A DNA stretch of 64,000 nt from Macrostomum lignano (GCA_002269645.1 NIVC01000199.1:310001-374000); one strand, 5' to 3'; shown: positions 1,054 through 47,943, counted from the stretch's first letter. Notes: generated from the letters alone by a model not told the origin. Numbers and translations are program-made.

Positions 1054-4000
1054 GTTAGTTCAGATTCACTTTTGTTTGGAGTAAACTTGTGGGCTCGCAA
1101 AGATGAGTGGTCAGATGGAACAGAGGAAGAATAGGAAAAGAGTGCAGATGAGAGGTTAACGAGTGCAAAGGAGAGGTTAAAGAGTGCAGATGAGAGGTTA
1201 ACGAGTGCAGCTCTAGGAGAGGTTAACGAGTGCAAAGGAGAGGTTAAAGAGTGCAGAGGAGAGGTTAAAGAGTGCAGATGAGAGGTTAAAGAGTGCAGCT
1301 CTAGGAGAGGTTAACGAGTGCAAAGGAGAGGTTAAAGAGTGCAGAGGAGAGGTTAAAGAGTGCAGAGGAGAGCTTAACGAGTGCAAAGGAGAGGTTAAAG
1401 AGTGCAGATGAGAGGTTAACGAGTGCAAAGGAGAGGTTAAAGAGGGCAGAGGAGAGGTTAAAGAGTGCAGAGGAGAGGTTAAAGAGTGCAGAGGAGAGGT
1501 TAACGAGTGCAGAGGAGAGGTTAAAGAGTGCAGCTCTAGGAGAGGTTAGAGTGCAGAGGAGAAGTTAACAAGTGCAGAGGAGAGGTTAAAGAGTGCAGAG
1601 GAGAGGTTAAAGAGTGCAGAGGAGAGGTTAAAGAGTGCAGAGGAGAGGTTAGAGTTGAGCGGGGTCAGTGCAAGTCCCAGATTGAAATAGCGCCAATTGA
1701 TATTCAATATTTAAATGGTTATAAACAAACTGGCAACCATACAGGTAAGCCTGGAGCAGGAGCTGCTGCTAGAAGCTGACCAGCTGGCCCGCTGCCTGGT
1801 CAGATCAACCGTGACCCGCCTAGCGATGCTGCAGAAGCGGTTCCACGCCGTTCAAGAGCACTTCGCCGATGTTGACGATTTTCGTCGTTGCGTGCCGCCG
1901 AATGTGCATCGGCTGCTGGAGCTGCTGGCCCGCTTCCGGCCTCGGACAGAGTTTAGCATTGAATTTATTAATGAGAGCTTCGGTTGCGGTGGCGCTACTA
2001 ATAGTAATAAGCCTAGCAGTGCCGCTGCTGGTGATAGCGAATTGGTTGGATTGAGCGACGCGGAATCAACTGACTCGGATGAGGATGATGGCCGAGGTGG
2101 CGGAGTTGAAATCACGGAGCTGAATAATTCCAACTGCTTGCCCTACAAAGTGGTGCCGAAAGTCTCTGATGATGAGCCAAGCGAACGGCTTAGCGCACTG
2201 GTCTTTGTTCGAGACTGTTTCACCGCCTACGGACTGTGCAAATTGCTTGAAGAAGTGTGCATCTGGGATCCGGAGTTTTTCTTTGTCAAGCCGGCTTATA
2301 TGTTCTCGCTGGTTACTAAGCCTAAGCAGCAGAGGGTCACGGACTATTTGAGAAAGTTTCGGCAGGTAAACGTTTCTGTAATCTGCAAATTGAAAATGTA
2401 TAGCATCGAATAGCTGGCCTAGTGATGGGGTTGTAGCCTAGTGATGGGGTTGTAGCCTAGTGATGGGGTTGTAGCCTAGTGATGGGGTTGTAGCCTAGTG
2501 ATGGGGTTGTAGCCTAGTGATGGGGTTGTAGCCTAGTGATGGGGTTGTAGCCTAGTGATGGGGTTGTAGCCTAGTGATGGGGTTGTAGCCTAGTGATGGG
2601 GTTGTAGCCTAGTGGAGGGGTTGTAGCCTAGTGATGGGGTTGTAGCCTAGTGATGGGGTTGTAGCCTAGTGATGGGGTTGTAGCCTAGTGATGGGGTTGT
2701 AGCCTAGTGGAGGGGTTGTAGCCTAGTTATGGGGTTGTAGCCTAGTGGAGGGGTTTTAGCCTAGTGATGGGGTTGTAGCCTAGTGATGGGGTTGTAGCCT
2801 AGTGATGGGGTTGTAGCCTAGTCATGGGGTTGTAGCCTAGTGGAGGGGTTGTAGCCTAGTGGAGGGGTTGTAGCCTAGTGATGGGGTTGTAGCCTAGTGA
2901 TGGGGTTGTAGCCTAGTGATGGGGTTGTAGCCTAGTGATGGGGTTGTAGCCTAGTGATGGGGTTGTAGCCTAGTGATGGGGTTGTAGCCTAGTGATGGGG
3001 TTGTAGCCTAGTGATGGGGTTGTAGCCTAGTGATGGGGTTGTAGCCTAATGATGGGGTTGTAACCTAGTCATGGGGTTGTAGCCTAGTGATGGGGTTGTA
3101 GCCTAGTGATGGGGTTGTAGCCTAGTGATGGGGTTGTAGCCTAGTGATGGGGTTGTAGCCTAGTGATGGGGTTGTAGCCTAGTGATGGGGTTGTAGCCTA
3201 GTGATGGGGTTGTAGCCTAGTGATGGGGTTGTAGCCTAGTGATGGGGTTGTAGCCTAGTGATGGGGTTGTAGCCTAGTGATGGGGTTGTAGCCTAGTGAT
3301 GGGGTTGTAGCCTAGTGATGGGGTTGTAGCCTAGTGATGGGGTTGTAGCCTAGTGATGGGGTTGTAGCCTAGTGATGGGGTTGTAGCCTAGTCATGGGGT
3401 TGTAGCCTAGTGATGGGGTTGTAGCCTAGTGGAAGGGGTTGTAGCCTAGTGATGGGGTTGTAGCCTAGTGATGGGGTTGTAGCCTAGTGGAAGGGGTTGT
3501 AGCCTAGTGGAGGGGTTGTAGCCTAGTGGAGGGGTTGTAGCCTAGTGGAGGGGTTGTAGCCTAGTGATGGGGTTGTAGCCTAGTGATGGGGTTGTAGCCT
3601 AGTGATGGGGTTGTAGCCTAGTGGAGGGGTTGTAGCCTAGTGGAGGGGTTGTAGCCTAGTGGAGGGGTTGTAGCCTAGTGATGGGGTTGTAGCCTAGTGA
3701 TGGGGTTGTAGCCTAGTGATGGGGTTGTAGCCTAGTGATGGGGTTGTAGCCTAGTGGAGGGGTTGTAGCCTAGTGATGGAGTTGTAGCCTAGTGATGGGG
3801 TTGTAGCCTAGTGATGGGGTTGTAGCCTAATGATGGGGTTGTAACCTAGTCATGGGGTTGTAGCCTAGTGATGGGGTTGTAGCCTAGTGATGGGGTTGTA
3901 GCCTAGTGATGGGGTTGTAGCCTAGTGGAGGGGTTGTAGCCTAGTGGAGGGGTTGTAGCCTAGTGGAGGGGTTGTAGCCTAGTGGAGGGGTTGTAGCCTA

Positions 4001-7000
4001 GTGGAGGGGTTGTAGCCTAGTGGAGGGGTTGTAGCCTAGTGGAGGGGTTGTAGCCTAGTGGAGGGGTTGTAGCCTAGTGGAGGGGTTGTAGCCTAGTGGA
4101 GGGGTTGTAGCCTAGTGGAGGGGTTGTAGCCTAGTGGAGGGGTTGTAGCCTAGTGATGGGGTTGTAGCCTAGTGATGGGGTTGTAGCCTAGTGGAGGGGT
4201 TGTAGCCTAGTGGAGGGGTTGTAGCCTAGTGATGGGGTTGTAGCCTAGTGGAGGGGTTGTAGCCTAGTGATGGGGTTGTAGCCTAGTGATGGGGTTGTAG
4301 CCTAGTGGAGGGGTTGTAGCCTAGTGGAGGGGTTGTAGCCTAGTGATGGGTTGTAGCCTAGTGATGGGGTTGTAGCCTAGTGATGGGGTTGTAGCCTAGT
4401 GATGGGGTTGTAGCCTAGTGGAGGGGTTGTAGCCTAGTGGAGGGGTTGTAGCCTAGTGATGGGGTTGTAGCCTAGTGATGGGGTTGTAGCCTAGTGGAGG
4501 GGTTGTAGCCTAGTGGAGGGGTTGTAGCCTAGTGAGGGGTTGTAGCCTAGTGGAGGGGTTGTAGCCTAGTGGAGGGGTTGTAGCCTAGTGGAGGGGTTGT
4601 AGCCTAGTGGAGGGGTTGTAGCCTAGTGGAGGGGTTGTAGCCTAGTGATGGGGTTGTAGCCTAGTGATGGGGTTGTAGCCTAGTGGAGGGGTTGTAGCCT
4701 AGTGGAGGGGTTGTAGCCTAGTGATGGGGTTGTAGCCTAGTGATGGGGTTGTAGCCTAGTGATGGGGTTGTAGCCTAGTGATGGGGTTGTAGCCTAGTGA
4801 GGGGTTGTAGCCTAGTGGAGGGGTTGTAGCCTAGTGATGGGGTTGTAGCCTAGTGATGGGGTTGTAGCCTAGTGATGGGGTTGTAGCCTAGTGATGGGGT
4901 TGTAGCCTAGTGATGGGGTTGTAGCCTAGTGGAGGGGTTGTAGCCTAGTGGAGGGGTTGTAGCCTAGTGGAGGGGTTGTAGCCTAGTGATGGGGTTGTAG
5001 CCTAGTGGAGGGGTTGTAGCCTAGTGATGGGGTTGTAGCCTAGTGGAGGGGTTGTAGCCTAGTGGAGGGGTTGTAGCCTAGTGATGGGGTTGTAGCCTAG
5101 TGATGGGGTTGTAGCCTAGTGAGGGGTTGTAGCCTAGTGATGGGGTTGTAGCCTAGTGATGGGGTTGTAGCCTAGTGATGGGGTTGTAGCCTAGTGATGG
5201 GGTTGTAGCCTAGTGATGGGGTTGTAGCCTAGTGATGGGGTTGTAGCCTAGTGATGGGGTTGTAGCCTAGTGATGGGGTTGTAGCCTAGTGAGGGGTTGT
5301 AGCCTAGTGATGGGGTTGTAGCCTAGTGATGGGGTTGTAGCCTAGTGATGGGGTTGTAGCCTAGTGATGGGGTTGTAGCCTAGTGATGGGGTTGTAGCCT
5401 AGTGGAGGGGTTGTAGCCTAGTGATGGGGTTGTAGCCTAGTGGAGGGGTTGTAGCCTAGTGATGGGGTTGTAGCCTAGTGATGGGGTTGTAGCCTAGTGA
5501 TGGGGTTGTAGCCTAGTGATGGGGTTGTAGCCTAGTGATGGGGTTGTAGCCTAGTGAGGGGTTGTAGCCTAGTGATGGGGTTGTAGCCTAGTGATGGGGT
5601 TGTAGCCTAGTGATGGGGTTGTAGCCTAGTGATGGGGTTGTAGCCTAGTGATGGGGTTGTAGCCTAGTGATGGGGTTGTAGCCTAGTGATGGGGTTGTAG
5701 CCTAGTGATGGGGTTGTAGCCTAGTGATGGGGTTGTAGCCTAGTGATGGGGTTGTAGCCTAGTGATGGGGTTGTAGCCTAGTGATGGGGTTGTAGCCTAG
5801 TGATGGGGTTGTAGCCTAGTGATGGGGTTGTAGCCTAGTGATGGGGTTGTAGCCTAGTGATGGGGTTGTAGCCTAGTGATGGGGTTGTAGCCTAGTGATG
5901 GGGTTGTAGCCTAGTGATGGGGTTGTAGCCTAGTGAGGGGTTGTAGCCTAGTGATGGGGTTGTAGCCTAGTGATGGGGTTGTAGCCTAGTGATGGGGTTG
6001 TAGCCTAGTGAGGGGTTGTAGCCTAGTGAGGGGTTGTAGCCTAGTGGAGGGGTTGTAGCCTAGTGATGGGGTTGTAGCCTAGTGATGGGGTTGTAGCCTA
6101 GTGATGGGGTTGTAGCCTAGTGAGGGGTTGTAGCCTAGTGATGGGGTTGTAGCCTAGTGAGGGGTTGTAGCCTAGTGATGGGTTGTAGCCTAGTGATGGG
6201 GTTGTAGCCTAGTGATGGGGTTGTAGCCTAGTGATGGGGTTGTAGCCTAGTGATGGGGTTGTAGCCTAGTGATGGGGTTGTAGCCTAGTGATGGGGTTGT
6301 AGCCTAGTGATGGGGTTGTAGCCTAGTGAGGGGTTGTAGCCTAGTGAGGGGTTGTAGCCTAGTGATGGGGTTGTAGCCTAGTGAGGGGTTGTAGCCTAGT
6401 GATGGGGTTGTAGCCTAGTGATGGGGTTGTAGCCTAGTGATGGGGTTGTAGCCTAGTGAGGGGTTGTAGCCTAGTGGAGGGGTTGTAGCCTAGTGATGGG
6501 GTTGTAGCCTAGTGGAGGGGTTGTAGCCTAGTGGAGGGGTTGTAGCCTAGTGATGGGGTTGTAGCCTAGTGATGGGGTTGTAGCCTAGTGATGGGGTTGT
6601 AGCCTAGTGATGGGGTTGTAGCCTAGTGATGGGGTTGTAGCCTAGTGAGGGGTTGTAGCCTAGTGATGGGGTTGTAGCCTAGTGATGGGGTTGTAGCCTA
6701 GTGAGGGGTTGTAGCCTAGTGAGGGGTTGTAGCCTAGTGATGGGGTTGTAGCCTAGTGATGGGGTTGTAGCCTAGTGATGGGGTTGTAGCCTAGTGATGG
6801 GGTTGTAGCCTAGTGATGGGGTTGTAGCCTAGTGAGGGGTTGTAGCCTAGTGAGGGGTTGTAGCCTAGTGGAGGGGTTGTAGCCTAGTGAGGGGTTGTAG
6901 CCTAGTGGAGGGGTTGTAGCCTAGTGGAGGGGTTGTAGCCTAGTGATGGGGTTGTAGCCTAGTGATGGGGTTGTAGCCTAGTGAGGGGTTGTAGCCTAGT

Positions 7001-10000
7001 GAGGGGTTGTAGCCTAGTGATGGGGTTGTAGCCTAGTGAGGGGTTGTAGCCTAGTGATGGGGTTGTAGCCTAGTGATGGGGTTGTAGCCTAGTGAGGGGT
7101 TGTAGCCTAGTGGAGGGGTTGTAGCCTAGTGATGGGGTTGTAGCCTAGTGATGGGGTTGTAGCCTAGTGATGGGGTTGTAGCCTAGTGATGGGGTTGTAG
7201 CCTAGTGATGGGGTTGTAGCCTAGTGAGGGGTTGTAGCCTAGTGAGGGGTTGTAGCCTAGTGATGGGGTTGTAGCCTAGTGAGGGGTTGTAGCCTAGTGA
7301 TGGGGTTGTAGCCTAGTGAGGGGTTGTAGCCTAGTGAGGGGTTGTAGCCTAGTGAGGGGTTGTAGCCTAGTGAGGGGTTGTAGCCTAGTGGAGGGGTTGT
7401 AGCCTAGTGGAGGGGTTGTAGCCTAGTGATGGGGTTGTAGCCTAGTGATGGGGTTGTAGCCTAGTGATGGGGTTGTAGCCTAGTGAGGGGTTGTAGCCTA
7501 GTGATGGGGTTGTAGCCTAGTGATGGGGTTGTAGCCTAGTGATGGGGTTGTAGCCTAGTGATGGGGTTGTAGCCTAGTGATGGGGTTGTAGCCTAGTGAT
7601 GGGGTTGTAGCCTAGTGATGGGGTTGTAGCCTAGTGATGGGGTTGTAGCCTAGTGATGGGGTTGTAGCCTAGTGATGGGGTTGTAGCCTAGTGATGGGGT
7701 TGTAGCCTAGTGAGGGGTTGTAGCCTAGTGAGGGGTTGTAGCCTAGTGAGGGGTTGTAGCCTAGTGATGGGGTTGTAGCCTAGTGATGGGGTTGTAGCCT
7801 AGTGATGGGGTTGTAGCCTAGTGAGGGGTTGTAGCCTAGTGATGGGGTTGTAGCCTAGTGATGGGGTTGTAGCCTAGTGATGGGGTTGTAGCCTAGTGAT
7901 GGGGTTGTAGCCTAGTGATGGGGTTGTAGCCTAGTGATGGGGTTGTAGCCTAGTGATGGGGTTGTAGCCTAGTGATGGGGTTGTAGCCTAGTGATGGGGT
8001 TGTAGCCTAGTGATGGGGTTGTAGCCTAGTGATGGGGTTGTAGCCTAGTGATGGGGTTGTAGCCTAGTGATGGGGTTGTAGCCTAGTGATGGGGTTGTAG
8101 CCTAGTGATGGGGTTGTAGCCTAGTGATGGGGTTGTAGCCTAGTGATGGGGTTGTAGCCTAGTGATGGGGTTGTAGCCTAGTGATGGGGTTGTAGCCTAG
8201 TGATGGGGTTGTAGCCTAGTGAGGGGTTGTAGCCTAGTGATGGGGTTGTAGCCTAGTGATGGGGTTGTAGCCTAGTGATGGGGTTGTAGCCTAGTGATGG
8301 GGTTGTAGCCTAGTGATGGGGTTGTAGCCTAGTGGAGGGGTTGTAGCCTAGTGGAGGGGTTGTAGCCTAGTGGAGGGGTTGTAGCCTAGTGGAGGGGTTG
8401 TAGCCTAGTGGAGGGGTTGTAGCCTAGTGATGGGGTTGTAGCCTAGTGATGGGGTTGTAGCCTAGTGATGGGGTTGTAGCCTAGTGGAGGGGTTGTAGCC
8501 TAGTGATGGGGTTGTAGCCTAGTGGAGGGGTTGTAGCCTAGTGATGGGGTTGTAGCCTAGTGATGGGGTTGTAGCCTAGTGGAGGGGTTGTAGCCTAGTG
8601 GAGGGGTTGTAGCCTAGTGATGGGGTTGTAGCCTAGTGATGGGGTTGTAGCCTAGTGATGGGGTTGTAGCCTAGTGATGGGGTTGTAGCCTAGTGATGGG
8701 GTTGTAGCCTAGTGGAGGGGTTGTAGCCTAGTGAGGGGTTGTAGCCTAGTGAGGGGTTGTAGCCTAGTGAGGGGTTGTAGCCTAGTGATGGGGTTGTAGC
8801 CTAGTGAGGGGTTGTAGCCTAGTGGAGGGGTTGTAGCCTAGTGGAGGGGTTGTAGCCTAGTGGAGGGGTTGTAGCCTAGTGGAGGGGTTGTAGCCTAGTG
8901 AGGGGTTGTAGCCTAGTGATGGGGTTGTAGCCTAGTGGATGGGGTTGTAGCCTAGTGGAGGGGTTGTAGCCTAGTGGAGGGGTTGTAGCCTAGTGATGGG
9001 GTTGTAGCCTAGTGATGGGGTTGTAGCCTAGTGATGGGGTTGTAGCCTAGTGATGGGGTTGTAGCCTAGTGATGGGGTTGTAGCCTAGTGATGGGGTTGT
9101 AGCCTAGTGATGGGGTTGTAGCCTAGTGATGGGGTTGTAGCCTAGTGATGGGGTTGTAGCCTAGTGATGGGGTTGTAGCCTAGTGATGGGGTTGTAGCCT
9201 AGTGAGGGGTTGTAGCCTAGTGGAGGGGTTGTAGCCTAGTGATGGGGTTGTAGCCTAGTGATGGGGTTGTAGCCTAGTGGAGGGGTTGTAGCCTAGTGAT
9301 GGGGTTGTAGCCTAGTGGAGGGGTTGTAGCCTAGTGATGGGGTTGTAGCCTAGTGATGGGGTTGTAGCCTAGTGATGGGGTTGTAGCCTAGTGATGGGGT
9401 TGTAGCCTAGTGATGGGGTTGTAGCCTAGTGATGGGGTTGTAGCCTAGTGATGGGGTTGTAGCCTAGTGATGGGGTTGTAGCCTAGTGATGGGGTTGTAG
9501 CCTAGTGATGGGGTTGTAGCCTAGTGATGGGGTTGTAGCCTAGTGATGGGGTTGTAGCCTAGTGATGGGGTTGTAGCCTAGTGATGGGGTTGTAGCCTAG
9601 TGATGGGGTTGTAGCCTAGTGATGGGGTTGTAGCCTAGTGATGGGGTTGTAGCCTAGTGATGGGGTTGTAGCCTAGTGATGGGGTTGTAGCCTAGTGATG
9701 GGGTTGTAGCCTAGTGATGGGGTTGTAGCCTAGTGATGGGGTTGTAGCCTAGTGATGGGGTTGTAGCCTAGTGATGGGGTTGTAGCCTAGTGATGGGGTT
9801 GTAGCCTAGTGATGGGGTTGTAGCCTAGTGATGGGGTTGTAGCCTAGTGATGGGGTTGTAGCCTAGTGATGGGGTTGTAGCCTAGTGATGGGGTTGTAGC
9901 CTAGTGATGGGGTTGTAGCCTAGTGATGGGGTTGTAGCCTAGTGATGGGGTTGTAGCCTAGTGATGGGGTTGTAGCCTAGTGATGGGGTTGTAGCCTAGT

Positions 10001-13000
10001 GATGGGGTTGTAGCCTAGTGATGGGGTTGTAGCCTAGTGATGGGGTTGTAGCCTAGTGATGGGGTTGTAGCCTAGTGATGGGGTTGTAGCCTAGTGATGG
10101 GGTTGTAGCCTAGTGATGGGGTTGTAGCCTAGTGATGGGGTTGTAGCCTAGTGATGGGGTTGTAGCCTAGTGATGGGGTTGTAGCCTAGTGATGGGGTTG
10201 TAGCCTAGTGATGGGGTTGTAGCCTAGTGATGGGGTTGTAGCCTAGTGATGGGGTTGTAGCCTAGTGATGGGGTTGTAGCCTAGTGAGGGGTTGTAGCCT
10301 AGTGAGGGGTTGTAGCCTAGTGATGGGGTTGTAGCCTAGTGATGGGGTTGTAGCCTAGTGATGGGGTTGTAGCCTAGTGATGGGGTTGTAGCCTAGTGAT
10401 GGGGTTGTAGCCTAGTGAGGGGTTGTAGCCTAGTGATGGGGTTGTAGCCTAGTGATGGGGTTGTAGCCTAGTGATGGGGTTGTAGCCTAGTGATGGGGTT
10501 GTAGCCTAGTGATGGGGTTGTAGCCTAGTGATGGGGTTGTAGCCTAGTGATGGGGTTGTAGCCTAGTGATGGGGTTGTAGCCTAGTGATGGGGTTGTAGC
10601 CTAGTGATGGGGTTGTAGCCTAGTGATGGGGTTGTAGCCTAGTGAGGGGTTGTAGCCTAGTGATGGGGTTGTAGCCTAGTGAGGGGTTGTAGCCTAGTGA
10701 GGGGTTGTAGCCTAGTGAGGGGTTGTAGCCTAGTGGAGGGGTTGTAGCCTAGTGAGGGGTTGTAGCCTAGTGAGGGGTTGTAGCCTAGTGGAGGGGTTGT
10801 AGCCTAGTGAGGGGTTGTAGCCTAGTGATGGGGTTGTAGCCTAGTGATGGGGTTGTAGCCTAGTGATGGGGTTGTAGCCTAGTGATGGGGTTGTAGCCTA
10901 GTGGAGGGGTTGTAGCCTAGTGATGGGGTTGTAGCCTAGTGATGGGGTTGTAGCCTAGTGGAGGGGTTGTAGCCTAGTGATGGGGTTGTAGCCTAGTGAT
11001 GGGGTTGTAGCCTAGTGATGGGGTTGTAGCCTAGTGATGGGGTTGTAGCCTAGTGATGGGGTTGTAGCCTAGTGATGGGGTTGTAGCCTAGTGATGGGGT
11101 TGTAGCCTAGTGAGGGGTTGTAGCCTAGTGGAGGGGTTGTAGCCTAGTGGAGGGGTTGTAGCCTAGTGGAGGGGTTGTAGCCTAGTGGAGGGGTTGTAGC
11201 CTAGTGAGGGGTTGTAGCCTAGTGAGGGGTTGTAGCCTAGTGATGGGGTTGTAGCCTAGTGAGGGGTTGTAGCCTAGTGAGGGGTTGTAGCCTAGTGAGG
11301 GGTTGTAGCCTAGTGATGGGGTTGTAGCCTAGTGAGGGGTTGTAGCCTAGTGATGGGGTTGTAGCCTAGTGATGGGGTTGTAGCCTAGTGAGGGGTTGTA
11401 GCCTAGTGATGGGGTTGTAGCCTAGTGATGGGGTTGTAGCCTAGTGATGGGGTTGTAGCCTAGTGATGGGGTTGTAGCCTAGTGAGGGGTTGTAGCCTAG
11501 TGGAGGGGTTGTAGCCTAGTGAGGGGTTGTAGCCTAGTGAGGGGTTGTAGCCTAGTGATGGGGTTGTAGCCTAGTGGAGGGGTTGTAGCCTAGTGAGGGG
11601 TTGTAGCCTAGTGGAGGGGTTGTAGCCTAGTGGAGGGGTTGTAGCCTAGTGGAGGGGTTGTAGCCTAGTGGAGGGGTTGTAGCCTAGTGGGGGTTGTAGC
11701 CTAGTGAGGGGTTGTAGCCTAGTGATGGGGTTGTAGCCTAGTGATGGGGTTGTAGCCTAGTGATGGGGTTGTAGCCTAGTGATGGGGTTGTAGCCTAGTG
11801 ATGGGGTTGTAGCCTAGTGATGGGGTTGTAGCCTAGTGATGGGGTTGTAGCCTAGTGATGGGGTTGTAGCCTAGTGATGGGGTTGTAGCCTAGTGATGGG
11901 GTTGTAGCCTAGTGATGGGGTTGTAGCCTAGTGATGGGGTTGTAGCCTAGTGATGGGGTTGTAGCCTAGTGATGGGGTTGTAGCCTAGTGGGGGTTGTAG
12001 CCTAGTGGAGGGGTTGTAGCCTAGTGAGGGGTTGTAGCCTAGTGAGGGGTTGTAGCCTAGTGATGGGGTTGTAGCCTAGTGAGGGGTTGTAGCCTAGTGA
12101 TGGGGTTGTAGCCTAGTGAGGGGTTGTAGCCTAGTGATGGGGTTGTAGCCTAGTGATGGGGTTGTAGCCTAGTGATGGGGTTGTAGCCTAGTGATGGGGT
12201 TGTAGCCTAGTGATGGGGTTGTAGCCTAGTGATGGGGTTGTAGCCTAGTGATGGGGTTGTAGCCTAGTGATGGGGTTGTAGCCTAGTGATGGGGTTGTAG
12301 CCTAGTGATGGGGTTGTAGCCTAGTGATGGGGTTGTAGCCTAGTGATGGGGTTGTAGCCTAGTGATGGGGTTGTAGCCTAGTGATGGGGTTGTAGCCTAG
12401 TGATGGGGTTGTAGCCTAGTGATGGGGTTGTAGCCTAGTGATGGGGTTGTAGCCTAGTGATGGGGTTGTAGCCTAGTGATGGGGTTGTAGCCTAGTGATG
12501 GGGTTGTAGCCTAGTGATGGGGTTGTAGCCTAGTGATGGGGTTGTAGCCTAGTGATGGGGTTGTAGCCTAGTGATGGGGTTGTAGCCTAGTGATGGGGTT
12601 GTAGCCTAGTGATGGGGTTGTAGCCTAGTGATGGGGTTGTAGCCTAGTGATGGGGTTGTAGCCTAGTGATGGGGTTGTAGCCTAGTGATGGGGTTGTAGC
12701 CTAGTGATGGGGTTGTAGCCTAGTGATGGGGTTGTAGCCTAGTGATGGGGTTGTAGCCTAGTGATGGGGTTGTAGCCTAGTGATGGGGTTGTAGCCTAGT
12801 GATGGGGTTGTAGCCTAGTGATGGGGTTGTAGCCTAGTGATGGGGTTGTAGCCTAGTGATGGGGTTGTAGCCTAGTGATGGGGTTGTAGCCTAGTGATGG
12901 GGTTGTAGCCTAGTGATGGGGTTGTAGCCTAGTGATGGGGTTGTAGCCTAGTGATGGGGTTGTAGCCTAGTGATGGGGTTGTAGCCTAGTGATGGGGTTG

Positions 13001-16000
13001 TAGCCTAGTGATGGGGTTGTAGCCTAGTGGAGGGGTTGTAGCCTAGTGATGGGGTTGTAGCCTAGTGGAGGGGTTGTAGCCTAGTGGAGGGGTTGTAGCC
13101 TAGTGGAGGGGTTGTAGCCTAGTGATGGGGTTGTAGCCTAGTGATGGGGTTGTAGCCTAGTGATGGGGTTGTAGCCTAGTGATGGGGTTGTAGCCTAGTG
13201 ATGGGGTTGTAGCCTAGTGATGGGGTTGTAGCCTAGTGATGGGGTTGTAGCCTAGTGATGGGGTTGTAGCCTAGTGATGGGGTTGTAGCCTAGTGATGGG
13301 GTTGTAGCCTAGTGATGGGGTTGTAGCCTAGTGATGGGGTTGTAGCCTAGTGATGGGGTTGTAGCCTAGTGATGGGGTTGTAGCCTAGTGATGGGGTTGT
13401 AGCCTAGTGATGGGGTTGTAGCCTAGTGAGGGGTTGTAGCCTAGTGATGGGGTTGTAGCCTAGTGATGGGGTTGTAGCCTAGTGAGGGGTTGTAGCCTAG
13501 TGATGGGGTTGTAGCCTAGTGGAGGGGTTGTAGCCTAGTGGAGGGGTTGTAGCCTAGTGGAGGGGTTGTAGCCTAGTGGAGGGGTTGTAGCCTAGTGGAG
13601 GGGTTGTAGCCTAGTGATGGGGTTGTAGCCTAGTGATGGGGTTGTAGCCTAGTGATGGGGTTGTAGCCTAGTGATGGGGTTGTAGCCTAGTGAGGGGTTG
13701 TAGCCTAGTGAGGGTTGTAGCCTAGTGAGGGGTTGTAGCCTAGTGATGGGGTTGTAGCCTAGTGATGGGGTTGTAGCCTAGTGGAGGGGTTGTAGCCTAG
13801 TGATGGGGTTGTAGCCTAGTGATGGGGTTGTAGCCTAGTGATGGGGTTGTAGCCTAGTGATGGGGTTGTAGCCTAGTGATGGGGTTGTAGCCTAGTGATG
13901 GGGTTGTAGCCTAGTGGAGGGGTTGTAGCCTAGTGGAGGGGTTGTAGCCTAGTGGAGGGGTTGTAGCCTAGTGATGGGGTTGTAGCCTAGTGGAGGGGTT
14001 GTAGCCTAGTGATGGGGTTGTAGCCTAGTGGAGGGGTTGTAGCCTAGTGGAGGGGTTGTAGCCTAGTGGAGGGGTTGTAGCCTAGTGGAGGGGTTGTAGC
14101 CTAGTGGAGGGGTTGTAGCCTAGTGAGGGGTTGTAGCCTAGTGATGGGGTTGTAGCCTAGTGATGGGGTTGTAGCCTAGTGGAGGGGTTGTAGCCTAGTG
14201 GATGGGGTTGTAGCCTAGTGATGGGGTTGTAGCCTAGTGATGGGGTTGTAGCCTAGTGGAGGGGTTGTAGCCTAGTGATGGGTTGTAGCCTAGTGATGGG
14301 GTTGTAGCCTAGTGATGGGGTTGTAGCCTAGTGATGGGGTTGTAGCCTAGTGATGGGGTTGTAGCCTAGTGATGGGGTTGTAGCCTAGTGGAGGGGTTGT
14401 AGCCTAGTGGAGGGGTTGTAGCCTAGTGGAGGGGTTGTAGCCTAGTGATGGGGTTGTAGCCTAGTGGAGGGGTTGTAGCCTAGTGATGGGGTTGTAGCCT
14501 AGTGATGGGGTTGTAGCCTAGTGATGGGGTTGTAGCCTAGTGATGGGGTTGTAGCCTAGTGATGGGGTTGTAGCCTAGTGATGGGGTTGTAGCCTAGTGA
14601 TGGGGTTGTAGCCTAGTGATGGGGTTGTAGCCTAGTGGAAGGGGTTGTAGCCTAGTGGAGGGGTTGTAGCCTAGTGGATGGGGTTGTAGCCTAGTGATGG
14701 GGTTGTAGCCTAGTGATGGGGTTGTAGCCTAGTGATGGGGTTGTAGCCTAGTGATGGGGTTGTAGCCTAGTGATGGGGTTGTAGCCTAGTGATGGGGTTG
14801 TAGCCTAGTGGAGGGGTTGTAGCCTAGTGATGGGGTTGTAGCCTAGTGATGGGGTTGTAGCCTAGTGATGGGGTTGTAGCCTAGTGATGGGGTTGTAGCC
14901 TAGTGATGGGGTTGTAGCCTAGTGATGGGGTTGTAGCCTAGTGATGGGGTTGTAGCCTAGTGATGGGGTTGTAGCCTAGTGATGGGGTTGTAGCCTAGTG
15001 ATGGGGTTGTAGCCTAGTGATGGGTTGTAGCCTAGTGAGGGGTTGTAGCCTAGTGGAGGGGTTGTAGCCTAGTGATGGGGTTGTAGCCTAGTGGAGGGGT
15101 TGTAGCCTAGTGATGGGGTTGTAGCCTAGTGATGGGGTTGTAGCCCAGTGGTTAAAGCGTCGGGCTCACGACTGAAAGGTCGGGGGCTCGATTCCCGATC
15201 CCACGAGAACAGTTTGTGTCCTTGAGTAATACACTTTAAACTCTGCATTTCTTCAGTTCACCCAGCTGTAAAATGGGTGCCAGCATTAGCTGGAGTAACT
15301 GAGGCTGTGTGTGGCGACCCCCCAGTCCTTGGACTGAACAGCCGTACGCAGCCCTCAGATGCACCGCGCAATAGCTGCGGCTGAGCTGTCGGCTGCACAT
15401 CTGCCCATTAGGGCAGGTGTAATTAATAATAATTTTTATTTTTATATTGAAAACAGTCGTTAGTAAAAACGTTAATGCATATGGAAAATGAGTCATATAG
15501 GTCAGCACCCGGTAATTTAGCCCAGGTAGGATGGATACGAGATAGGTCAGCACCCGGTAAGAATCAGCAGTTACTAATTCATCACACCCGTAATTTCAGG
15601 GCGAGGCCAACCTGCTAGTGGTGACAGAAGCAATGGAGAACCTCGGCGACCTGCCCAAATGCAATCTGGTAGTCCGGTTCAATCCGCCGCGCACTTTCAA
15701 TTCCTATTTTCATTCTAAGAATCGCGCTCGGTCTTTCAATTCAACCTACGCCACCTTAGTGACGCCTTGTGACGCAGGTTTCCAAGAAAGTCACGCCGCG
15801 TTCAAAGCTACGGAGGAGCTGCTGCTGCGCAGCGGTGCAGCCTCCGACGAATCTCGGCGACGATTGGCTCGCGGAGATGATTCGCCAATTGCTGACGCCG
15901 ATGACGAGTCCTCCGAGTCGGAGACATTCGCGCCATTCGGTCTGTCGGGTCCTTCGGTGACTGCGGATGCGGCGATACCCGTGGTGAATCGCTACTGCGC

Positions 16001-19000
16001 CCGGCTGCCGTCAGATGTTTTTGCCAGCCTTGTGCCGCTGTGGCAAATTGAGAAGTCGGCTGATGTCGATGCTTATAGGTTTGTGTAGCTGCACTGGGGG
16101 GGGGGTCGCCACACACAGCCTCAATTACCCCAGCTAATGCTGGCACCCATTTTACAGCTGGGTGAACTGAAGCAATGCAGAGTTATAGTATCTTGCTCAA
16201 GAACACAAATGTTCCAGTGGGATCGGGAATCGAACCCTCGACCTTTCAGTCGGGAGTCCAACTCTCTACCCACTGGGCTACAACCCAAGGACTACTCAAT
16301 AGAAGGACTGAAAACCTCGTTTCTTGGAGAATTATAGGAGGCAGGTTCTTCCGAAAAAATACACTACGGAGATAGGAAGTTTTTATTTTTTCGCAAAGTT
16401 TTTACCTGAATGTCCCCTGTGTGTTTACCTGGATGTCACATGTGTTTTTACCTGGATGTCACCTGTGTTTTTACCTGGATGTCACCTGTGTGTTTACCTG
16501 GATGTCACATGTGTTTTTACCTGGATGTCACCTGTGTTTTTACCTGGATGTCCCCTGTGTTTTTACCTGGATGTCACATTTGTTTTTACCTGGATGTCAC
16601 ATGTGTTTTTACCTGAATGTCCCCTGTGTTTTTACCTGGATGTCACCTGTGTTTTTACCTGGATGTCCCCTGTGCTTTTACCTGGATGTCCCCTGTGTTT
16701 TTACCTGAATGTCCCCTGTGTTTTTACCTGGATGTCCCCTGTGTTTTTACCTAGATGTCCCCTGTGTTTTTACCTGGATGTCCCCTGTGTTTTTACCTGG
16801 ATGTCCCCTGTGTGTTTACCTGATGTCCCCTGTGTGTTTACCTGATGTCCCCTGTGTTTTTACCTAGATGTCCCCTGTGTTTTTACCTGGATGTCCCCTG
16901 TGTTTTTACCTGGATGTCCCCTGTGTGTTTACCTGATGTCCCCTGTGTGTTTACCTGATGTCCCCTGTGTTTTTACCTAGATGTCCCCTGTGTTTTTACC
17001 TGGATGTCCCCTGTGTTTTTACCTGGATGTCCCCTGTGTGTTTACCTGATGTCCCCTGTGTGTTTACCTGATGTCCCCTGTGTTTTTACCTAGATGTCCC
17101 CTGTGTTTTTACCTGGATGTCCCCTGTGTTTTTACCTGGATGTCACCTGTGTTTTTACCTGGATGTCCCCTGTGTTTTTACCTGGATGTCACCTGTGTTT
17201 TTACCTAGATGTCACCTGTGTTTTTACCTGGATGTCACATGTGTTTTTACCTGGATGTCACATGTGTTTTTACCTGGATGTCCCCTGTGTTTTTACCTGG
17301 ATGTCACATGTGTTTTTACCTGGATGTCACCTGTGTTTTTACCTGGATGTCACCTGTGTTTTTACCTGGATGTCACATGTGTTTTACCTGGATGTCACCT
17401 GTGTTTTTACCTGGATGTCACCTGTGTTTTTACCTGGATGTCACATGTGTTTTACCTGGATGTCACCTGTGTTTTTACCTGGATGTCACCTGTGTTTTTA
17501 CCTGGATGTCACATGTGTTTTACCTGGATGTTCCCTGTGTTTTATCTTTATGTCACATGTGCTTTTTCTGGATCTCCGTAAGCTGTTTCCTGAAAATGAT
17601 CTGCGTTATTTTTCCGTGTGCATGTAGATTGTTAAATATTGTTAATACATAATTGCTTTTGTTTCCTGGAAGTCCCTAGTTTTCATTAGCCAACCAGCAT
17701 GTATTAAAATGTTATTAGAACCACCATAAAGCTTCCCGGATGCTAAACTGCATTGCCACTCTAACCAATCCATTTGCTTGTCAGATGCCGGCTCTGCCTA
17801 CCCATGAATTCGCCCTGTCGCCGTTCAGTCATCGGCGCCTGGTGCCCGACAGTCCAGTCGGCAAAGTGCAGCGCCGCGCTGGCTTGCGTCAGAGAGTTGC
17901 ACTCAGCTGGTCAGCTGGACTCAAACCTGAAGCCGTACAGCAAAGAGGAGCTGGTCAATCTTGCGCACAAGTCTATCATTCAATCGCCAATGTCAAAACT
18001 TAGTAATGGCGATGGGGTTATTGGCAATAGCAACACGGGTATTGGTGGTTCGAAACGGCGTCAGGTGTATCAGAAACAGCTGGCTGCTGAGCTGACCGCT
18101 AACCTGCCTGAGCCAGACCTGCCGTGCAGACTGTACCGCATTCGACTGCGACCGGAGCACGTCTGGGCGATGCCTTCGGCTGCCGTGGCGGCTGCGACTG
18201 ACCCGGAACAGCTGATGACCACTTCTAGGTGTCGATCATCGTTTGGACTGATTCTGCGAGATCCTCTGCCTGATTGTCTGCCGCTGTTCTGCTTGTATCC
18301 GCGGCAGGGGGAGGTAAGTTGAGATGATTCACGCTTACTGATTGGAATAAGGTGGTGCTTAGTGAATAGTGAAGAATCAGGAGCGGCGCTTAATGATGAT
18401 AGAAATGAGGTGGTGCTTAGTGAAGAATCAGGAGTGGTGCTTAATAAAAGAAATGAGGTGGTGCTTAGTGAAGAATCAGGAGCGGCGCTTAATGAAAGAA
18501 ATGAAGTGATGCTTAGTGAAGAATCAGGAGTGGTGCTTAATAAAAGAAATGAGGTGGTGCTTAGTGAATAATCAGAAGTGGTGCTTAATGATAGAAATGA
18601 AGTGATGCTTAGTGAAGAATCAGGAGTGGTGCTTAATGATAGACATGAAGTGATGCTTAGTGAAGAATCAGGAGCAGTGCTTAATGAAAGAAATGAGGTG
18701 GTGCTTAGTGAAGAATCAGGAGCGGTGATTAATGAAAGAAATGAGGTGGTGCTTAGTGAAGAATCAGGAGCGGTGCTTAATGAAAGAAATGAAGTGATGC
18801 TTAGTGAAGAATCAGGAGCGGCGCTTAATGATGATAGAAATGAGGTGGTGCTTAGTGAAGAATCAGGAGCGGTGCTTAATGAAAGAAATGAAGTGGTTCT
18901 TAGCGAATTTCTGCCTTCTCTCATTTTCCACAGACCGATGTAGACTTTCCTCTGATTGCTGACTCCCTGACCCTGTCAGCTGAGCAGCTGAGCCTGCTCA

Positions 19001-30056: not shown

Positions 30057-31136
30057 ATGCTATCTTGTTGCTGCTGCTGCCGCGGCCGTTCCGGGCAAAA
30101 AGGCAAAGTGCTGCTGCAGGATCCCAACGCTGAAAATGGCAGCCAACAAGCGACTGCCGATGGCAAGTATCGCCGAAAGAAACTCGACCACGAATTCTCG
30201 GCGGAGCCACCGGCTGTCGTGGCGACGGAGGCCGCTGCTCCGATGCTTGACAGCACCGATCATGGTCGAGACAGGCAGCCGAGCTCCGGTAGCAACGCCG
30301 CTGTCGTAGTCGACAGTCCGAGTGACGCCGAGATTCGTCCGACTTCGGTTGTGACGCTGCGCAACGAGCCGCAGCACAAGAAAGCCGCTTGCCCAGCGCT
30401 GCCTACGCAACAGCCTCAGCAACAGCAGAAGCACAAAGAGGTCACTCCCCAAACTAGTTGGGTGAAGGTTCGAGAACCGCACGAGCACCAGCACGGCTAT
30501 TCGGTGTTTCAAAGCGACGATAACGAGCTGACCATTGTCGATAGCGACTACTCTGACTACGAGTCTGAGCATGAGGACACGCTCACCGAGCTGGCTGCTC
30601 ACGGCGGCGGCGCCTCCGAGTTTGGCAAGCGGAGCACCGCCACTCTGAGCTTCGTGATGCCTCGCGTACGTCGCGGAGCGGCCAACAGCAACGGTACAAC
30701 CGACGAGGACGACGAGATCAGTGTCCGAAAAAGAGCGGAGCGCCTGTCCAACTTTCTTCTGGCTAGCGAGGCGGCCGCTGAAAGCGACGACTTCGGCTGG
30801 GAGACTCTGCCGAATTCGGCATTCGAGCAGCCGCCTGAGCAGTTTATAGACGACGAAGAGGAAGTGATAGTTGTCGCGGCTAAGCCCGATGCTCCTGCTG
30901 CCGCCGGTAACTCTGCGTCCGCAGCGGCTACGCACGGCGGCCTGACGGCGGAAGAAGACTCCTCAGCCAGGGAGAGCCTGCTGGCGCTGGACCAGGCTTT
31001 GGCGGTGCTTGAGCTGGCCAGCGGGGAGGCTGACTACGCCGGTGCGGCCGCCACCGCTGCCTCGGCTGCTGCACCTGTTGACGATGACGAGGTGGTCATT
31101 GTTCCGGCTGCCCCCCGGATGAGCAAGCTGATTTGA
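30057..31136 (+). CDS. Uncharacterised 359-aa acidic, low-complexity protein with N-terminal Cys5 cluster
   Basis: 1080-nt non-repetitive GC-rich ORF with ATG, flanked by AT-rich DNA; no family recognised. Confidence 0.7.
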   Translation: MLSCCCCCRGRSGQKGKVLLQDPNAENGSQQATADGKYRRKKLDHEFSAEPPAVVATEAAAPMLDSTDHGRDRQPSSGSNAAVVVDSPSDAEIRPTSVVTLRNEPQHKKAACPALPTQQPQQQQKHKEVTPQTSWVKVREPHEHQHGYSVFQSDDNELTIVDSDYSDYESEHEDTLTELAAHGGGASEFGKRSTATLSFVMPRVRRGAANSNGTTDEDDEISVRKRAERLSNFLLASEAAAESDDFGWETLPNSAFEQPPEQFIDDEEEVIVVAAKPDAPAAAGNSASAAATHGGLTAEEDSSARESLLALDQALAVLELASGEADYAGAAATAASAAAPVDDDEVVIVPAAPRMSKLI

Positions 31137-34188: not shown

Positions 34189-34261
34189 CTGCATGGGGGT
34201 GATTGACAGTTGCTTAATACTAAATATACATGTACCTGTAGCAGGGGAGTGTGGGGCCATT

Positions 34262-46004: not shown

Positions 46005-46740
46005 TTCAAGTCTTTGGGGTTTAAAACTTCGTTAATCTGTACTGGGGTGCCAATTTGCGAATGAGAATAAACGGTGCAAACAGTTTGCTTTAGCGATTCT
46101 AACTTGAACAGTGTGGCAATTAGTAAATTTTGGGTTTATCTAATATCCAATAAGATTTGCGCGCATTTTAAGCAAGTAGAGACTAAGTCGTTAAGAGATA
46201 TGAAATGGAATTAGGAAATTTCCACGCGCTGAGCTAAGTACGGATTGGTCAAAGTACAGTTAGTCTCATGTATGCAGAACAGGAGACATTTCAGTCTCCT
46301 TCCTTCGCGCACGGTTGGAAAGAAATTTCAAGAGTAATGTACATTCATCATGTACATTCATTCTTCACTGTGTTCTTAACTTTTTTCCAAACCCTTCTTG
46401 GCCTTGGGGGCCCCCCATGGATTCTCTCATCTAAAGTCTTCCATTGGAGGGTAGTTCTATTTATAGAATCGTTGGACCTTGCCCCATGGGTGGCTTGTTT
46501 TCCCACCGTTAAGGCGGGGGGAGGGCTGACTCACTCAGTTCGTATGCTTGCTTTAAAATCTGTATATGTACATTCACAATTTCAGACCCAGTTTTTACTC
46601 CCCGTCAACCCTCAACTTCTTTCCCTTCAAATGACAGAGAAGCGAAATAGCCATAGTCACTCTGAACTCCACAGTCTCGCTAGCTTTCCCAGCTTAGCGT
46701 CTTGCCAGATTTTGCCTGTTGTTCTGCAATCCGCACCAAA

Positions 46741-47622: not shown

Positions 47623-47943
47623 ATAATAATAATAATAATTGATTACACCTGCCCTAATGGGCAGATGTGCAACCGACAGCTCAGCCGCAGCTATTGCGCG
47701 GCGCATCTGAAGGCTGCGTACGGCTGTTCAGTCCAAGGACTGGGGGTCGCCACACAGCCTCAATTACCCCAGCTAATGCTGGCACCCATTTTACAGCTGG
47801 GTGAACTGAAACAATGCAGAGTTAAGTGTCTCTTGCTCAAGGACACAAATTGTTCCAGTGGGATCGGGAATCGAACCCCCGACCTTTCAGTCGTGAGTCC
47901 GACGCTCTGACCACTAGGCTGCAACCCCCTCTAGGCTACAACA
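47623..47943 (-). mobile_element. Same SINE, copy 3 (full length, (ATT)n tail, doubled head)
   Basis: Reverse complement of copy 1, with perfect B box GGGTTCGATTCCC; head reads GTTGTAGCCTAGAGGGG-GTTGCAGCCTAGTGG. Confidence 0.9.

What the first reader, a model, noticed from the sequence alone, without database searches (positions are those of the whole stretch)
15134..16286. Inverted SINE pair brackets a frame-shifting Dicer helicase exon: possible dsRNA-based self-regulation or circRNA
Seen: SINE copy 1 (+, about 15135-15327) and copy 2 (-, 16093-16286) are reverse complements flanking exon 15600-16078. Copy 2 begins ~14 nt after the 5' splice site. The exon is 479 nt (phase 0 to 2), so skipping it shifts the frame. 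Known: inverted SINEs (e.g. Alu) around exons promote back-splicing, exon skipping and ADAR editing. Inference: the Dicer pre-mRNA can fold a ~190-bp duplex, which is a substrate for Dicer, Drosha or ADAR. This could form a negative feedback loop in the RNAi pathway.
Basis: partly seen in the sequence, partly recalled or inferred. Interest (0 to 1): 0.72.

Follow-up and report, generated by a model that had tools for sequence, protein, structure and literature searches.

The report
Inverted SINE pair around Dicer exon
Two old copies of a mobile element sit in opposite orientation on either side of one exon of the flatworm Macrostomum lignano's Dicer-1 gene and could pair in the RNA, but they drift like ordinary intron DNA, so this looks like transposon legacy and not a proven control switch.

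Summary
The window is Macrostomum lignano contig NIVC01000199.1 (window position + 310,000). Exon 15600-16078 (479 nt, phase 0 to 2) is a real Dicer-1 exon. The annotated protein PAA88233.1 and a cDNA-derived Dicer both contain it with exactly the proposed junctions. A tRNA-derived, CORE-like SINE lies at 15135-15435 (+). A truncated copy lies at 16096-16286 (-), starting 18 nt after the donor. The arms pair over about 170 bp (longest helix 43 bp; -327 kcal/mol against -95 +/- 7 for shuffles).

New here: all three subgenome copies of Dicer carry both arms, so the pair predates the genome triplication. In one copy arm 2 is still full length, so the truncation is a later deletion of about 235 nt. 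The arms evolve like the neighbouring intron (5-12% against 1-2.7% for exons). They match their own partner no better than a partner from another gene copy, and compensatory changes are absent.

Back-splicing, skipping or editing are mechanistically plausible by-products. A Dicer feedback loop has no support. The first 19 nt of SINE copy 1 have expanded into a minisatellite of 12, 111 or 671 units in the three gene copies. In the window this is 12.7 kb.

The parts
1749..2365 (+). Upstream Dicer exon (residues ~304-508 of PAA88233.1), donor CAG|GTAAAC, ends in phase 0. The start coordinate is approximate to +/-2 nt.
   Evidence: Exact mapping of P0241 on the window; splice context and joined translation.
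2366..15599 (+). Upstream intron, 13,234 nt. It consists of 51 nt of unique sequence, the 19-nt array, SINE copy 1 and 164 nt of unique/VNTR sequence. The same intron is 3,093 nt and 1,009 nt in the other two gene copies.
2417..15150 (+). Minisatellite of about 671-674 units of 19 nt (GGGGTTGTAGCCTAGTGAT plus two variants). The unit equals the first 19 nt of the SINE head, in phase with copy 1. G-rich on the sense strand.
   Evidence: TRF: 674.4 copies, 97% matches; unit census; the orthologous arrays have 111 and 12 units.
15135..15435 (+). SINE copy 1, full length. tRNA-like head 15135-15204 (A box present, B box mutated). CORE-like body about 15215-15280. 3' hairpin 15397-15420. (AAT)n tail, then T5 runs at 15433 and 15439.
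15135..15330 (+). Arm 1: the part of copy 1 that pairs with copy 2.
15600..16078 (+). Dicer exon, 479 nt, phase 0 to 2. It encodes helicase motifs V-VI (degenerate) and the start of the dimerisation domain, residues 509-668.
16079..16096 (+). 18 nt of original intron after the donor (GTTTGTGTAGCTGCACTG), left of the deletion junction.
   Evidence: Comparison with gene copy g3 (L005), which has about 235 more nt here.
16096..16286 (-). SINE copy 2 = arm 2. Only the 5' ~190 nt remain. A and B boxes are intact. The 3' body, hairpin and tail are lost by deletion.
16398..17543 (+). 23-nt minisatellite (50 units) in the downstream intron (16079-17784).
17785..18313 (+). Next Dicer exon (rest of the dimerisation domain), acceptor TGTCAG|ATG.
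47625..47928 (-). SINE copy 3, full length, outside the Dicer gene (which ends at 29,236). It is the reference for the complete element and has a partial extra head unit at its 5' end.

Best explanation
Two copies of one tRNA-derived, CORE-like SINE inserted independently and in opposite orientation into the two originally short introns around this Dicer-1 exon. This happened before the three M. lignano subgenomes (S, L1, L2) separated. Since then they have behaved as ordinary intron DNA. They drift at the local intron rate. One arm lost its inner ~110 nt plus ~100 nt of intron in a single deletion shared by two gene copies. The 5' end of the other arm seeded a hypervariable 19-nt minisatellite.

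Shown: the anatomy, the shared ancestry, the neutral-looking divergence, the strong predicted duplex, and inclusion of the exon in the deposited mRNA-based protein.

Inferred: on the pre-mRNA the arms can pair (about 170-190 bp here, about 284 bp in gene copy g3). This would bring the acceptor and donor of the 479-nt exon together. By the established intronic-complementary-sequence mechanism, some transcripts should then be back-spliced into a circle. That leaves a frame-shifted, skipped linear RNA. The arms would also be exposed to dsRNA-binding enzymes. I regard this as a low-level by-product and not an evolved feedback on Dicer.
For: - Repeat and duplex.
- SINE nature: three dispersed copies, tRNA-like head with A/B boxes, 3' hairpin plus simple-repeat tail. 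Probable 10-nt target-site duplication ATATTGAAAA around array + copy 1 in g3 (36 of 3000 shuffles).
- Independent insertions: the flanks are not shared, and identities among copies 1, 2 and 3 are star-like at 87.8/88.8/88.8%.
- Age: both arms are present at the same exon in Mlig011615g1 (L004), g2 (window) and g3 (L005). These are the three subgenome copies described in PMC10733133.
- Secondary truncation: g3 keeps a full-length arm 2 with its tail, 118 nt from the donor. g1 and g2 share the deletion junction.
- Neutral drift: orthologous arms differ by 5-12%, unique intron by 4-18%, exons by 1-2.7%. Within-gene and cross-gene arm identity are 87.1 and 86.9%. There is no excess of compensatory changes or of wobble-preserving transitions.
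- Canonical splicing.
- Neither arm has a competing inverted partner inside its own intron.
Against: - No RNA-seq, small-RNA or RNase R data were available, so pairing in vivo is unshown.
- Both arms survive in all three gene copies in a genome where indels account for about a third of the length differences between paralogs (PMC10733133). The one deletion that hit arm 2 left 190 nt of pairing and moved it next to the donor. This is compatible with weak constraint.
- With three sequences the covariation test has little power.
- Stronger hairpins sometimes inhibit circularisation (PMC4201285). RNA helicases such as DHX9 unwind such duplexes in human cells (PMC11263572). The effect could therefore be nil.
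Confidence: 0.62

Rival explanations
1. Inert legacy. The arms are there, but co-transcriptional splicing, RNA helicases and RNA-binding proteins prevent productive pairing. No circle, skipping, editing or small RNAs arise at a measurable level.
For: The deposited mRNA-based protein and an independent cDNA include the exon. The arms drift neutrally. Not all repeats support circularisation, and very stable hairpins can inhibit it (PMC4201285). DHX9 suppresses such structures in human cells (PMC11263572).
Against: The duplex is long (170 bp, longest helix 43 bp) and has no competitor within either intron. Far shorter repeats work in human cells (PMC4201285). The 13-kb upstream intron should be slow to splice, which would favour back-splicing (inference).
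Confidence: 0.24
2. The pair is a selected autoregulatory device. The pre-mRNA duplex is cut or edited by Dicer, Drosha or ADAR, or diverts splicing to a circle or skip, so that RNAi-pathway activity feeds back on Dicer output.
For: The geometry is right. The pair is retained in all three subgenome copies. There is precedent for Dicer genes carrying a hairpin in their own pre-mRNA: Arabidopsis DCL1 intron 14/miR838 and Physcomitrella DCL1 intron 7/miR1047 (PMC4429486).
Against: There is no constraint or covariation on the arms. The arm geometry differs freely between gene copies: 190 against 284 bp paired, 18 against 118 nt from the donor, 270 to 535 nt from the acceptor. The gene is Dicer-1 type with degenerate helicase motifs, and flatworms have a separate Dicer-2 for long dsRNA (PMC5594548). 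There is no expression evidence.
Confidence: 0.08
3. Pol III antisense read-through. Arm 2 keeps intact A and B boxes but lost its own 3' end. A Pol III transcript started in it would run antisense through the donor site and the whole exon, giving an antisense RNA against Dicer.
For: A and B boxes are intact in copy 2. On the minus strand the first run of four or more T after 16286 is at 15488, beyond the exon.
Against: This is purely anatomical. Most genomic SINE copies are silent. An ~800-nt Pol III transcript is atypical. The full-length arm 2 of g3 also lacks an obvious terminator, so nothing is special about the truncation.
Confidence: 0.03
4. Artefact. The inverted pair or the 12.7-kb array is an assembly error or a local inverted duplication and not two insertions.
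For: The assembly is of a neopolyploid with many near-identical paralogs, and 36% of the assembly length lies in scaffolds reported as chimeric (PMC10733133). Long arrays are hard to assemble.
Against: The same pair is found on three separate contigs with independent substitutions. The flanks of the two arms are unrelated. The array has an irregular internal variant pattern typical of real minisatellites. The exact array length could still be wrong.
Confidence: 0.02

Closest known systems
Inverted Alu (IRAlu) pairs and other intronic complementary sequences flanking circRNA-forming exons (e.g. ZKSCAN1, HIPK3)
   Same: Two SINE copies in opposite orientation, one in each flanking intron. The identity of about 88% over 190 nt compares with 82% over 287 nt for ZKSCAN1 (PMC4201285). 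The exon is single and of suitable length, the splice sites are canonical, and there is no competing partner inside either intron.
   Different: The element is a tRNA/CORE-type SINE in a flatworm, not a 7SL-derived Alu. No back-splice junction has been observed. Whether the rule holds in Platyhelminthes is unknown.
Arabidopsis DCL1 intron-14 MIR838 hairpin and Physcomitrella DCL1 intron-7 miR1047
   Same: A Dicer-family pre-mRNA contains a structure that its own pathway could cut, and cutting would destroy the transcript (PMC4429486).
   Different: Those are short miRNA-type hairpins inside one intron with sequenced small RNAs. Here a ~190-bp imperfect duplex spans an exon, is TE-derived, shows no constraint and has no small-RNA evidence.
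CORE-SINE superfamily (MIR, BflSINE1, OR2, bivalve and gastropod CORE SINEs)
   Same: tRNA-derived head followed by a body that aligns with the MIR head plus core (z about 9-18 against shuffles). The 3' stem-loop and short tandem-repeat tail are as in L2/CR1-mobilised SINEs (PMC4824008 and PMC4758252).
   Different: The partner LINE is not identified. The papers read here list CORE-SINEs for vertebrates, lancelet, sea urchin and molluscs. None of them mentions one in a flatworm.
SINE-derived satellites (squamate sSat1-3) and tandem or palindromic SINE structures in bivalve introns
   Same: A tandem array grown from part of a SINE and still attached to it (PMC10702118). Direct and palindromic SINE arrangements inside introns are common in some bivalves (PMC11481361).
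   Different: Here the unit is only 19 nt, the extreme 5' end of the head including the A box, instead of 100-200 nt of head/body. Copy number differs 56-fold between homeologous loci.
Mouse oocyte Dicer(O) isoform driven by an intronic MT-C retrotransposon (own knowledge, Flemr et al. 2013)
   Same: A retroelement inside a Dicer intron next to helicase-coding exons that changes Dicer output.
   Different: That element acts as a Pol II promoter giving an N-terminally truncated, more active enzyme. Nothing comparable is indicated here.

Membership tests
tRNA-derived SINE | Internal Pol III promoter (A box TRGCNNAGTGG, B box GGTTCGANNCC) in a tRNA-like 5' head | tested here: met
   A box in copies 1 and 2, B box in copies 2 and 3. 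The full-length tRNA covariance model matches 15134-15203 at 20.6 bits, E 0.24, below the gathering score of 29. ARAGORN calls no tRNA, as expected for a decayed head.
tRNA-derived SINE | Short (100-600 nt), non-coding, multiple dispersed copies with unrelated flanks | tested here: met
   About 300 nt. Three copies in the window plus orthologues on two other contigs. Flanks are unrelated.
tRNA-derived SINE | LINE-type 3' end (stem-loop and/or simple-repeat tail) and target-site duplication | tested here: inconclusive
   A 10-bp stem hairpin plus (AAT)n/(ATT)n tail is present in copies 1 and 3 and in g3 arm 2. The TSD ATATTGAAAA around array + copy 1 is reached by 36 of 3000 shuffles in g3, but the 8-nt version by about 7-8% of shuffles in g1 and g2. 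No TSD was found for copy 3. The partner LINE is not identified.
CORE-SINE superfamily | Conserved ~65-nt CORE domain directly after the tRNA-related head | tested here: inconclusive
   Local alignment to a MIR consensus recalled from memory covers head plus core up to ...CTGTAAAATGGG. Scores are 37-55 against 17 +/- 2 for shuffles. No database consensus could be obtained.
Exon flanked by intronic complementary sequences that yields a circRNA | Reverse-complementary repeats of at least 30-40 nt, one in each flanking intron, able to pair | tested here: met
   170 bp paired, longest helix 43 bp, P(arm 1 paired to arm 2) 0.86.
Exon flanked by intronic complementary sequences that yields a circRNA | Back-splice junction reads and RNase R resistance | not testable with these tools
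   No transcriptome data are accessible. The annotated linear mRNA includes the exon.
Autoregulatory hairpin in a Dicer/Drosha-pathway gene (DCL1-miR838, DGCR8 type) | Small RNAs or cleavage products from the structure, and an inverse relation with host mRNA | not testable with these tools
   No small-RNA or degradome data are accessible.
Autoregulatory hairpin in a Dicer/Drosha-pathway gene (DCL1-miR838, DGCR8 type) | Evolutionary constraint on the structure (slower divergence, compensatory changes) | tested here: not met
   The arms diverge like intron. Within-gene complementarity equals cross-gene complementarity. There are 0-2 double changes against 0-1 in controls. Power is limited to three gene copies.
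Dicer-1 (canonical metazoan Dicer) | Domain order helicase - dimerisation - platform/PAZ - two RNase III - dsRBD, with catalytic signatures, and closer to Dcr-1/human Dicer than to Dcr-2 | tested here: met
   Pfam hits in order along the window. ERLETVGDS and QRLEFLGDA are present. The RNase IIIb piece matches fly Dcr-1 at 1.6e-50 and human Dicer at 3.7e-50, against Dcr-2 at 2.3e-26.

The most novel reading that the evidence does not exclude
The inverted SINE pair, retained at the same Dicer-1 exon in all three subgenomes, makes the Dicer-1 pre-mRNA a standing source of a long nuclear dsRNA and a 479-nt exon circle. Processing by Dicer-2, Drosha or ADAR would then couple dsRNA-pathway activity to Dicer-1 output. 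This would be an animal, TE-built counterpart of the plant DCL1/miR838 loop. The three homeologs would form a natural allelic series in arm length, arm-to-splice-site distance and upstream intron length (1 to 13 kb).
Probability: 0.07. Interest if true: 0.7.

Novelty: new member of a known kind. Interest (0 to 1): 0.33.

Why it matters
As it stands this is one more case of transposons creating complementary sequences around an exon, in a phylum where circRNA biogenesis rules are hardly studied. Two things give it modest value.

First, the host gene is Dicer-1, and skipping or circularising this exon would destroy the reading frame. Any measurable effect would therefore tax a core RNA-silencing enzyme.

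Second, M. lignano offers a ready-made experiment. The three expressed homeologs differ in the exon by 1-2.7%, so reads can be assigned to each. They also differ in duplex length (about 190 against 284 bp), in the distance of the arm from the donor (18 against 118 nt) and in upstream intron length (1.0, 3.1 and 13.2 kb). Transgenesis also exists for this animal (PMC5730564).

Separately, the 19-nt array shows a SINE 5' end turning into a minisatellite that lengthened an intron 13-fold after genome triplication. This is a clear example of how introns in this genome grow.

Tried and rejected
1. Protein search with the 159-aa exon found nothing, and a 130-aa RNase III query returned only short fragments. 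A long 1,587-aa query was needed to reach full-length Dicers and the M. lignano paralogs.
2. Two metagenome scans, a 28-mer of the SINE and the exon protein, found nothing.
3. ARAGORN and Rfam at gathering scores find no RNA gene in the window. A Plastid-ycf2 hit on the antisense of the SINE head and a Trp-leader hit on the tail hairpin are chance or tRNA-like matches.
PMC15861 is not held.
5. Local inverted duplication: rejected. The flanks are unrelated, divergence among the three copies is star-like, and the arms differ in extent.
6. Gene conversion or co-evolution between the arms: rejected.
7. Copy 3 as a competing pairing partner in the Dicer transcript: rejected. Dicer ends at 29,236 and copy 3 lies at 47.6 kb, beyond an aconitase gene on the other strand.
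8. Copy 2 as a primary 3'-truncated insertion or a short subfamily: rejected by the full-length orthologue in g3.
9. TSDs for copies 2 and 3 are not significant.
10. An arthropod origin, guessed from the EcKL kinase gene, was wrong. The source is a flatworm.

Full report
SOURCE. Two single-exon ORFs of the window are found by exact look-up on NCBI assembly GCA_002269645.1, contig NIVC01000199.1 (795,068 bp). Window position w corresponds to record position w + 310,000. The accession is the Mlig_3_7 assembly of the free-living flatworm Macrostomum lignano (PMC5730564).

THE OBSERVATION. The sequence shows two inverted arms. The repeat finder reports 15239-15323 against 16100-16184 (85 nt, 96% complementary) and 15127-15214 against 16207-16294 (88 nt, 84%). 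blastn joins them into 189 nt at 89.4%. RNAduplex gives -326.7 kcal/mol for the two arms, against -94.8 +/- 7.3 for shuffled arm 2 and -72 and -63 for each arm folded alone. The minimum-energy fold of 15100-16320 (-593.6 kcal/mol) pairs the arms end to end. In the partition function 86% of arm-1 bases pair with arm 2. There are 170 bp in 15 helical segments, the longest 43 bp. The donor (-3..+6) has only 0.28 probability of being unpaired.

THE EXON. The interval 15600-16078 is an open frame of 159 codons. It matches human Dicer residues 512-655 (E 2e-21) and an ancestral Dicer helicase (E 8e-25), with Pfam Helicase_C and Dicer_dimer. The splice contexts are CAG|GTAAAC (2365/2366), TTTCAG|GGC (15599/15600), TAG|GTTTGT (16078/16079) and TGTCAG|ATG (17784/17785). 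Normal joining keeps the frame and skipping shifts it. The GenBank protein of this very gene (PAA88233.1, Mlig011615g2, 1773 aa) and a cDNA-derived 'Dicer [Macrostomum lignano]' (ALD16267.1) both read ...RKFRQ|GEANLL...DAY-R-CRLCLP. The annotation was built from RNA-seq-guided transcripts (PMC5730564). The protein maps to the window in 14 exons from residue 184 to the stop at 29,236.

WHAT THE REPEAT IS.
- A third copy lies at 47625-47928 (-). It is 90.5% identical to copy 1 over about 300 nt and defines the full element. Copy 1 runs from 15135 to about 15435.
- The 5' 70 nt match the whole tRNA covariance model weakly (20.6 bits, E 0.24, below the gathering score). They carry A- and B-box motifs, each intact in two of the three copies.
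- The body aligns with the head plus core of the mammalian MIR consensus up to ...CTGTAAAATGGG (scores 37-55 against 17 +/- 2 for shuffles). CORE-SINEs are described from vertebrates, lancelet, sea urchins and molluscs (PMC4824008 and PMC4758252).
- The 3' end forms a 10-bp-stem hairpin followed by (AAT)n or (ATT)n. This is the usual look of SINEs mobilised by L2/CR1-type LINEs.
- Copy 2 contains only the first ~190 nt.

COMPARATIVE EVIDENCE. A long Dicer query retrieved the M. lignano cluster with three genomic members, Mlig011615g1, g2 (this window) and g3. Their loci could be fetched as L004 and L005. The DV1 line's assembly holds three paralogous subgenomes, S, L1 and L2. Genome-wide they differ by about 2.2% in SNPs and about one third in length through indels (PMC10733133).
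- All three gene copies have both arms around the same 479-nt exon with the same splice sites. The pair therefore predates subgenome divergence and is not a haplotype-specific insertion.
- In g3, arm 2 is full length with hairpin and tail and starts 118 nt after the donor. g1 and g2 share one junction (…GCACTG|GGGGG…) that removed about 235 nt: roughly 100 nt of intron plus the SINE's 3' ~110 nt and tail. The truncation is thus secondary. The proximity to the donor, 18 nt of retained intron, is a by-product of that deletion.
- Predicted duplexes are -343 (g2), -337 (g1) and -528 kcal/mol (g3, 284 paired bases).

IS THE PAIRING UNDER SELECTION? No sign of it.
- Orthologous arms differ by 5-12%, neighbouring unique intron by 4-18%, and the three exons by 1-2.7%.
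- Arm 1 is as similar to the arm 2 of another gene copy (mean 86.9%) as to its own partner (87.1%).
- Double changes that keep a pair number 0, 2 and 0 within genes, against 0-1 in cross-gene controls.
- Between the window's arms, transitions give 8 A.C mismatches and 3 G.U wobbles.
- Copies 1, 2 and 3 are equidistant at 87.8, 88.8 and 88.8%, so there is no homogenisation.
- With only three gene copies the power is low, but nothing points to constraint.

HOW IT PROBABLY WORKS. Neither arm has an inverted partner inside its own intron, so pairing across the exon is the only long-range option. In human cells 30-40 nt of complementarity with minimal introns suffices for back-splicing. [quoted passage not shown] However, not all repeats work, and very stable hairpins can inhibit (PMC4201285). 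Helicases and ADAR modulate the outcome (PMC11263572). Comparative work argues that most circRNAs are by-products of young TE insertions (PMC8516420). My best reading (0.62) is a neutral TE legacy that probably yields low-level back-splicing, skipping or editing. Next comes an entirely inert pair (0.24).

Besides the lack of constraint, the enzyme is Dicer-1 type: its RNase IIIb piece matches fly Dcr-1 at 1.6e-50 and human Dicer at 3.7e-50, against Dcr-2 at 2.3e-26. Its helicase is degenerate. TEAMENLGD and HSKNRAR sit in the positions of motifs V and VI, there is no Walker A or DExH in the N-terminal part, and there is no DEAD/ResIII Pfam hit. Flatworms also possess a separate Dicer-2 (PMC5594548). 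The nearest true precedent for the idea is plant DCL1 with the miR838 hairpin in intron 14, and moss DCL1 with miR1047 (PMC4429486).

A further anatomical reading gets 0.03. Arm 2 keeps both promoter boxes but no terminator before 15488 on its strand, so a Pol III transcript would be antisense to the whole exon.

THE ARRAY. Copy 1 is the last unit of a minisatellite at 2417-15150. It has 674 copies of 19 nt at 97% match, made of three interspersed variants of GGGGTTGTAGCCTAGTG(AT/GA/A). This sequence is the first 19 nt of the SINE head and includes the A box. The array starts 51 nt after the upstream donor at the same junction in all three gene copies, but it has 671, 111 and 12 units. The intron is accordingly 13,234, 3,093 and 1,009 nt, against a genome mean of 1.1-1.4 kb. 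In g3 the units equal the adjacent head exactly. A 10-nt direct repeat, ATATTGAAAA, brackets array + SINE in g3 (36 of 3000 shuffles; 8 nt in g1 and g2, about 7-8% of shuffles). This suggests that everything between descends from one insertion into an intron of under 200 nt. Copy 3 has a partial extra head unit too. SINE-derived satellites are known, but with units of 100-200 nt (PMC10702118).

VERDICT. The structural inference is sound and the regulatory interpretation is unsupported. This is a new member of a known kind of arrangement. Its interest is modest and rests mainly on the natural three-allele series in a transgenic-capable model.

Noticed in passing
window 2417-15150; L004 ~8298-10513; L005 7349-7575: A 19-nt minisatellite derived from the first 19 nt (A-box region) of the adjacent SINE head. 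It has 671, 111 and 12 units in the three homeologous Dicer introns. It is G-rich on the sense strand (unit 8 G, 2 C). The window's intron is 96% array.
   Followed up: yes
window, whole: 46% of the 64 kb is tandem repeat (25 arrays, periods 4-67 nt), against 15% reported genome-wide. Most Dicer introns in the window carry their own minisatellite.
   Followed up: partly
window 15487-15560; L004 10893-11339; L005 7915-8306: A ~54-nt repeat between SINE copy 1 and the acceptor is a VNTR with about 2, 8 and 6 units in the three gene copies. The distance from arm 1 to the acceptor therefore varies from 270 to 535 nt.
   Followed up: partly
window 23185-23587: Six tandem 67-nt units with a tRNA-like B box (GGTCCTGAGTTCGAATC) followed by a T6 run. 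This looks like a second tRNA/SINE-derived array. It starts at the 3' edge of the exon mapped to 22808-23200 and fills the start of the following intron.
   Followed up: no
Dicer protein P0241 (window exons 700-29236 plus upstream): The helicase domain looks catalytically dead. There is no GxGKT or DExH in the N-terminal 180 residues. Motifs V and VI read TEAMENLGD and HSKNRAR. There is no DEAD/ResIII Pfam hit. The RNase III domains are highly conserved.
   Followed up: partly
SINE alignment (arm 1 of g1, g2 and g3): Arm 1 of g1 and g3 share derived changes (CTTAGCTGAAAAATGGG) that g2 lacks, whereas arm 2 and the deletion group g1 with g2. The history of the three gene copies is mosaic, which suggests recombination or conversion between homeologs.
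   Followed up: partly
window 32.2-46.0 kb (-), 35889-37058 (-): An aconitase/IRP1-like gene lies on the minus strand. A single-exon ecdysteroid-kinase-like (EcKL/APH) gene is nested in one of its introns (E 2e-24).
   Followed up: partly
window 46684-47559 (+), 47625-47928 (-): A THAP-domain ORF with SINE copy 3 directly 3' of it. Copy 3 has a partial duplicate of its own head at the 5' end.
   Followed up: partly
window 60152-60368 and 60556-60783: Two 15-nt arrays, (CCGGACATTTGCCCT)n and (GAGGGCAAATGTCCG)n, are reverse complements of each other about 190 nt apart. This is a palindromic pair of minisatellites just 3' of an MFS transporter ORF.
   Followed up: no
window 61583-61966 and 62125-62502; 62683-63024 (-): A ~540-nt segment is tandemly duplicated, with ORFs identical over at least 70 residues, next to a WSC-domain exon.
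   Followed up: no
window 34261-35654: A near-perfect (TGAC)348 microsatellite of 1.4 kb (99% matches) inside the aconitase gene region.
   Followed up: no
window 49983-51641 (+), 30057-31136 (+): Long ORFs of 551 and 359 aa without any Pfam hit. The 359-aa one is an annotated gene and is also found next to Dicer at the g1 locus (359 aa); a 352-aa gene sits in the same position at the g3 locus.
   Followed up: no
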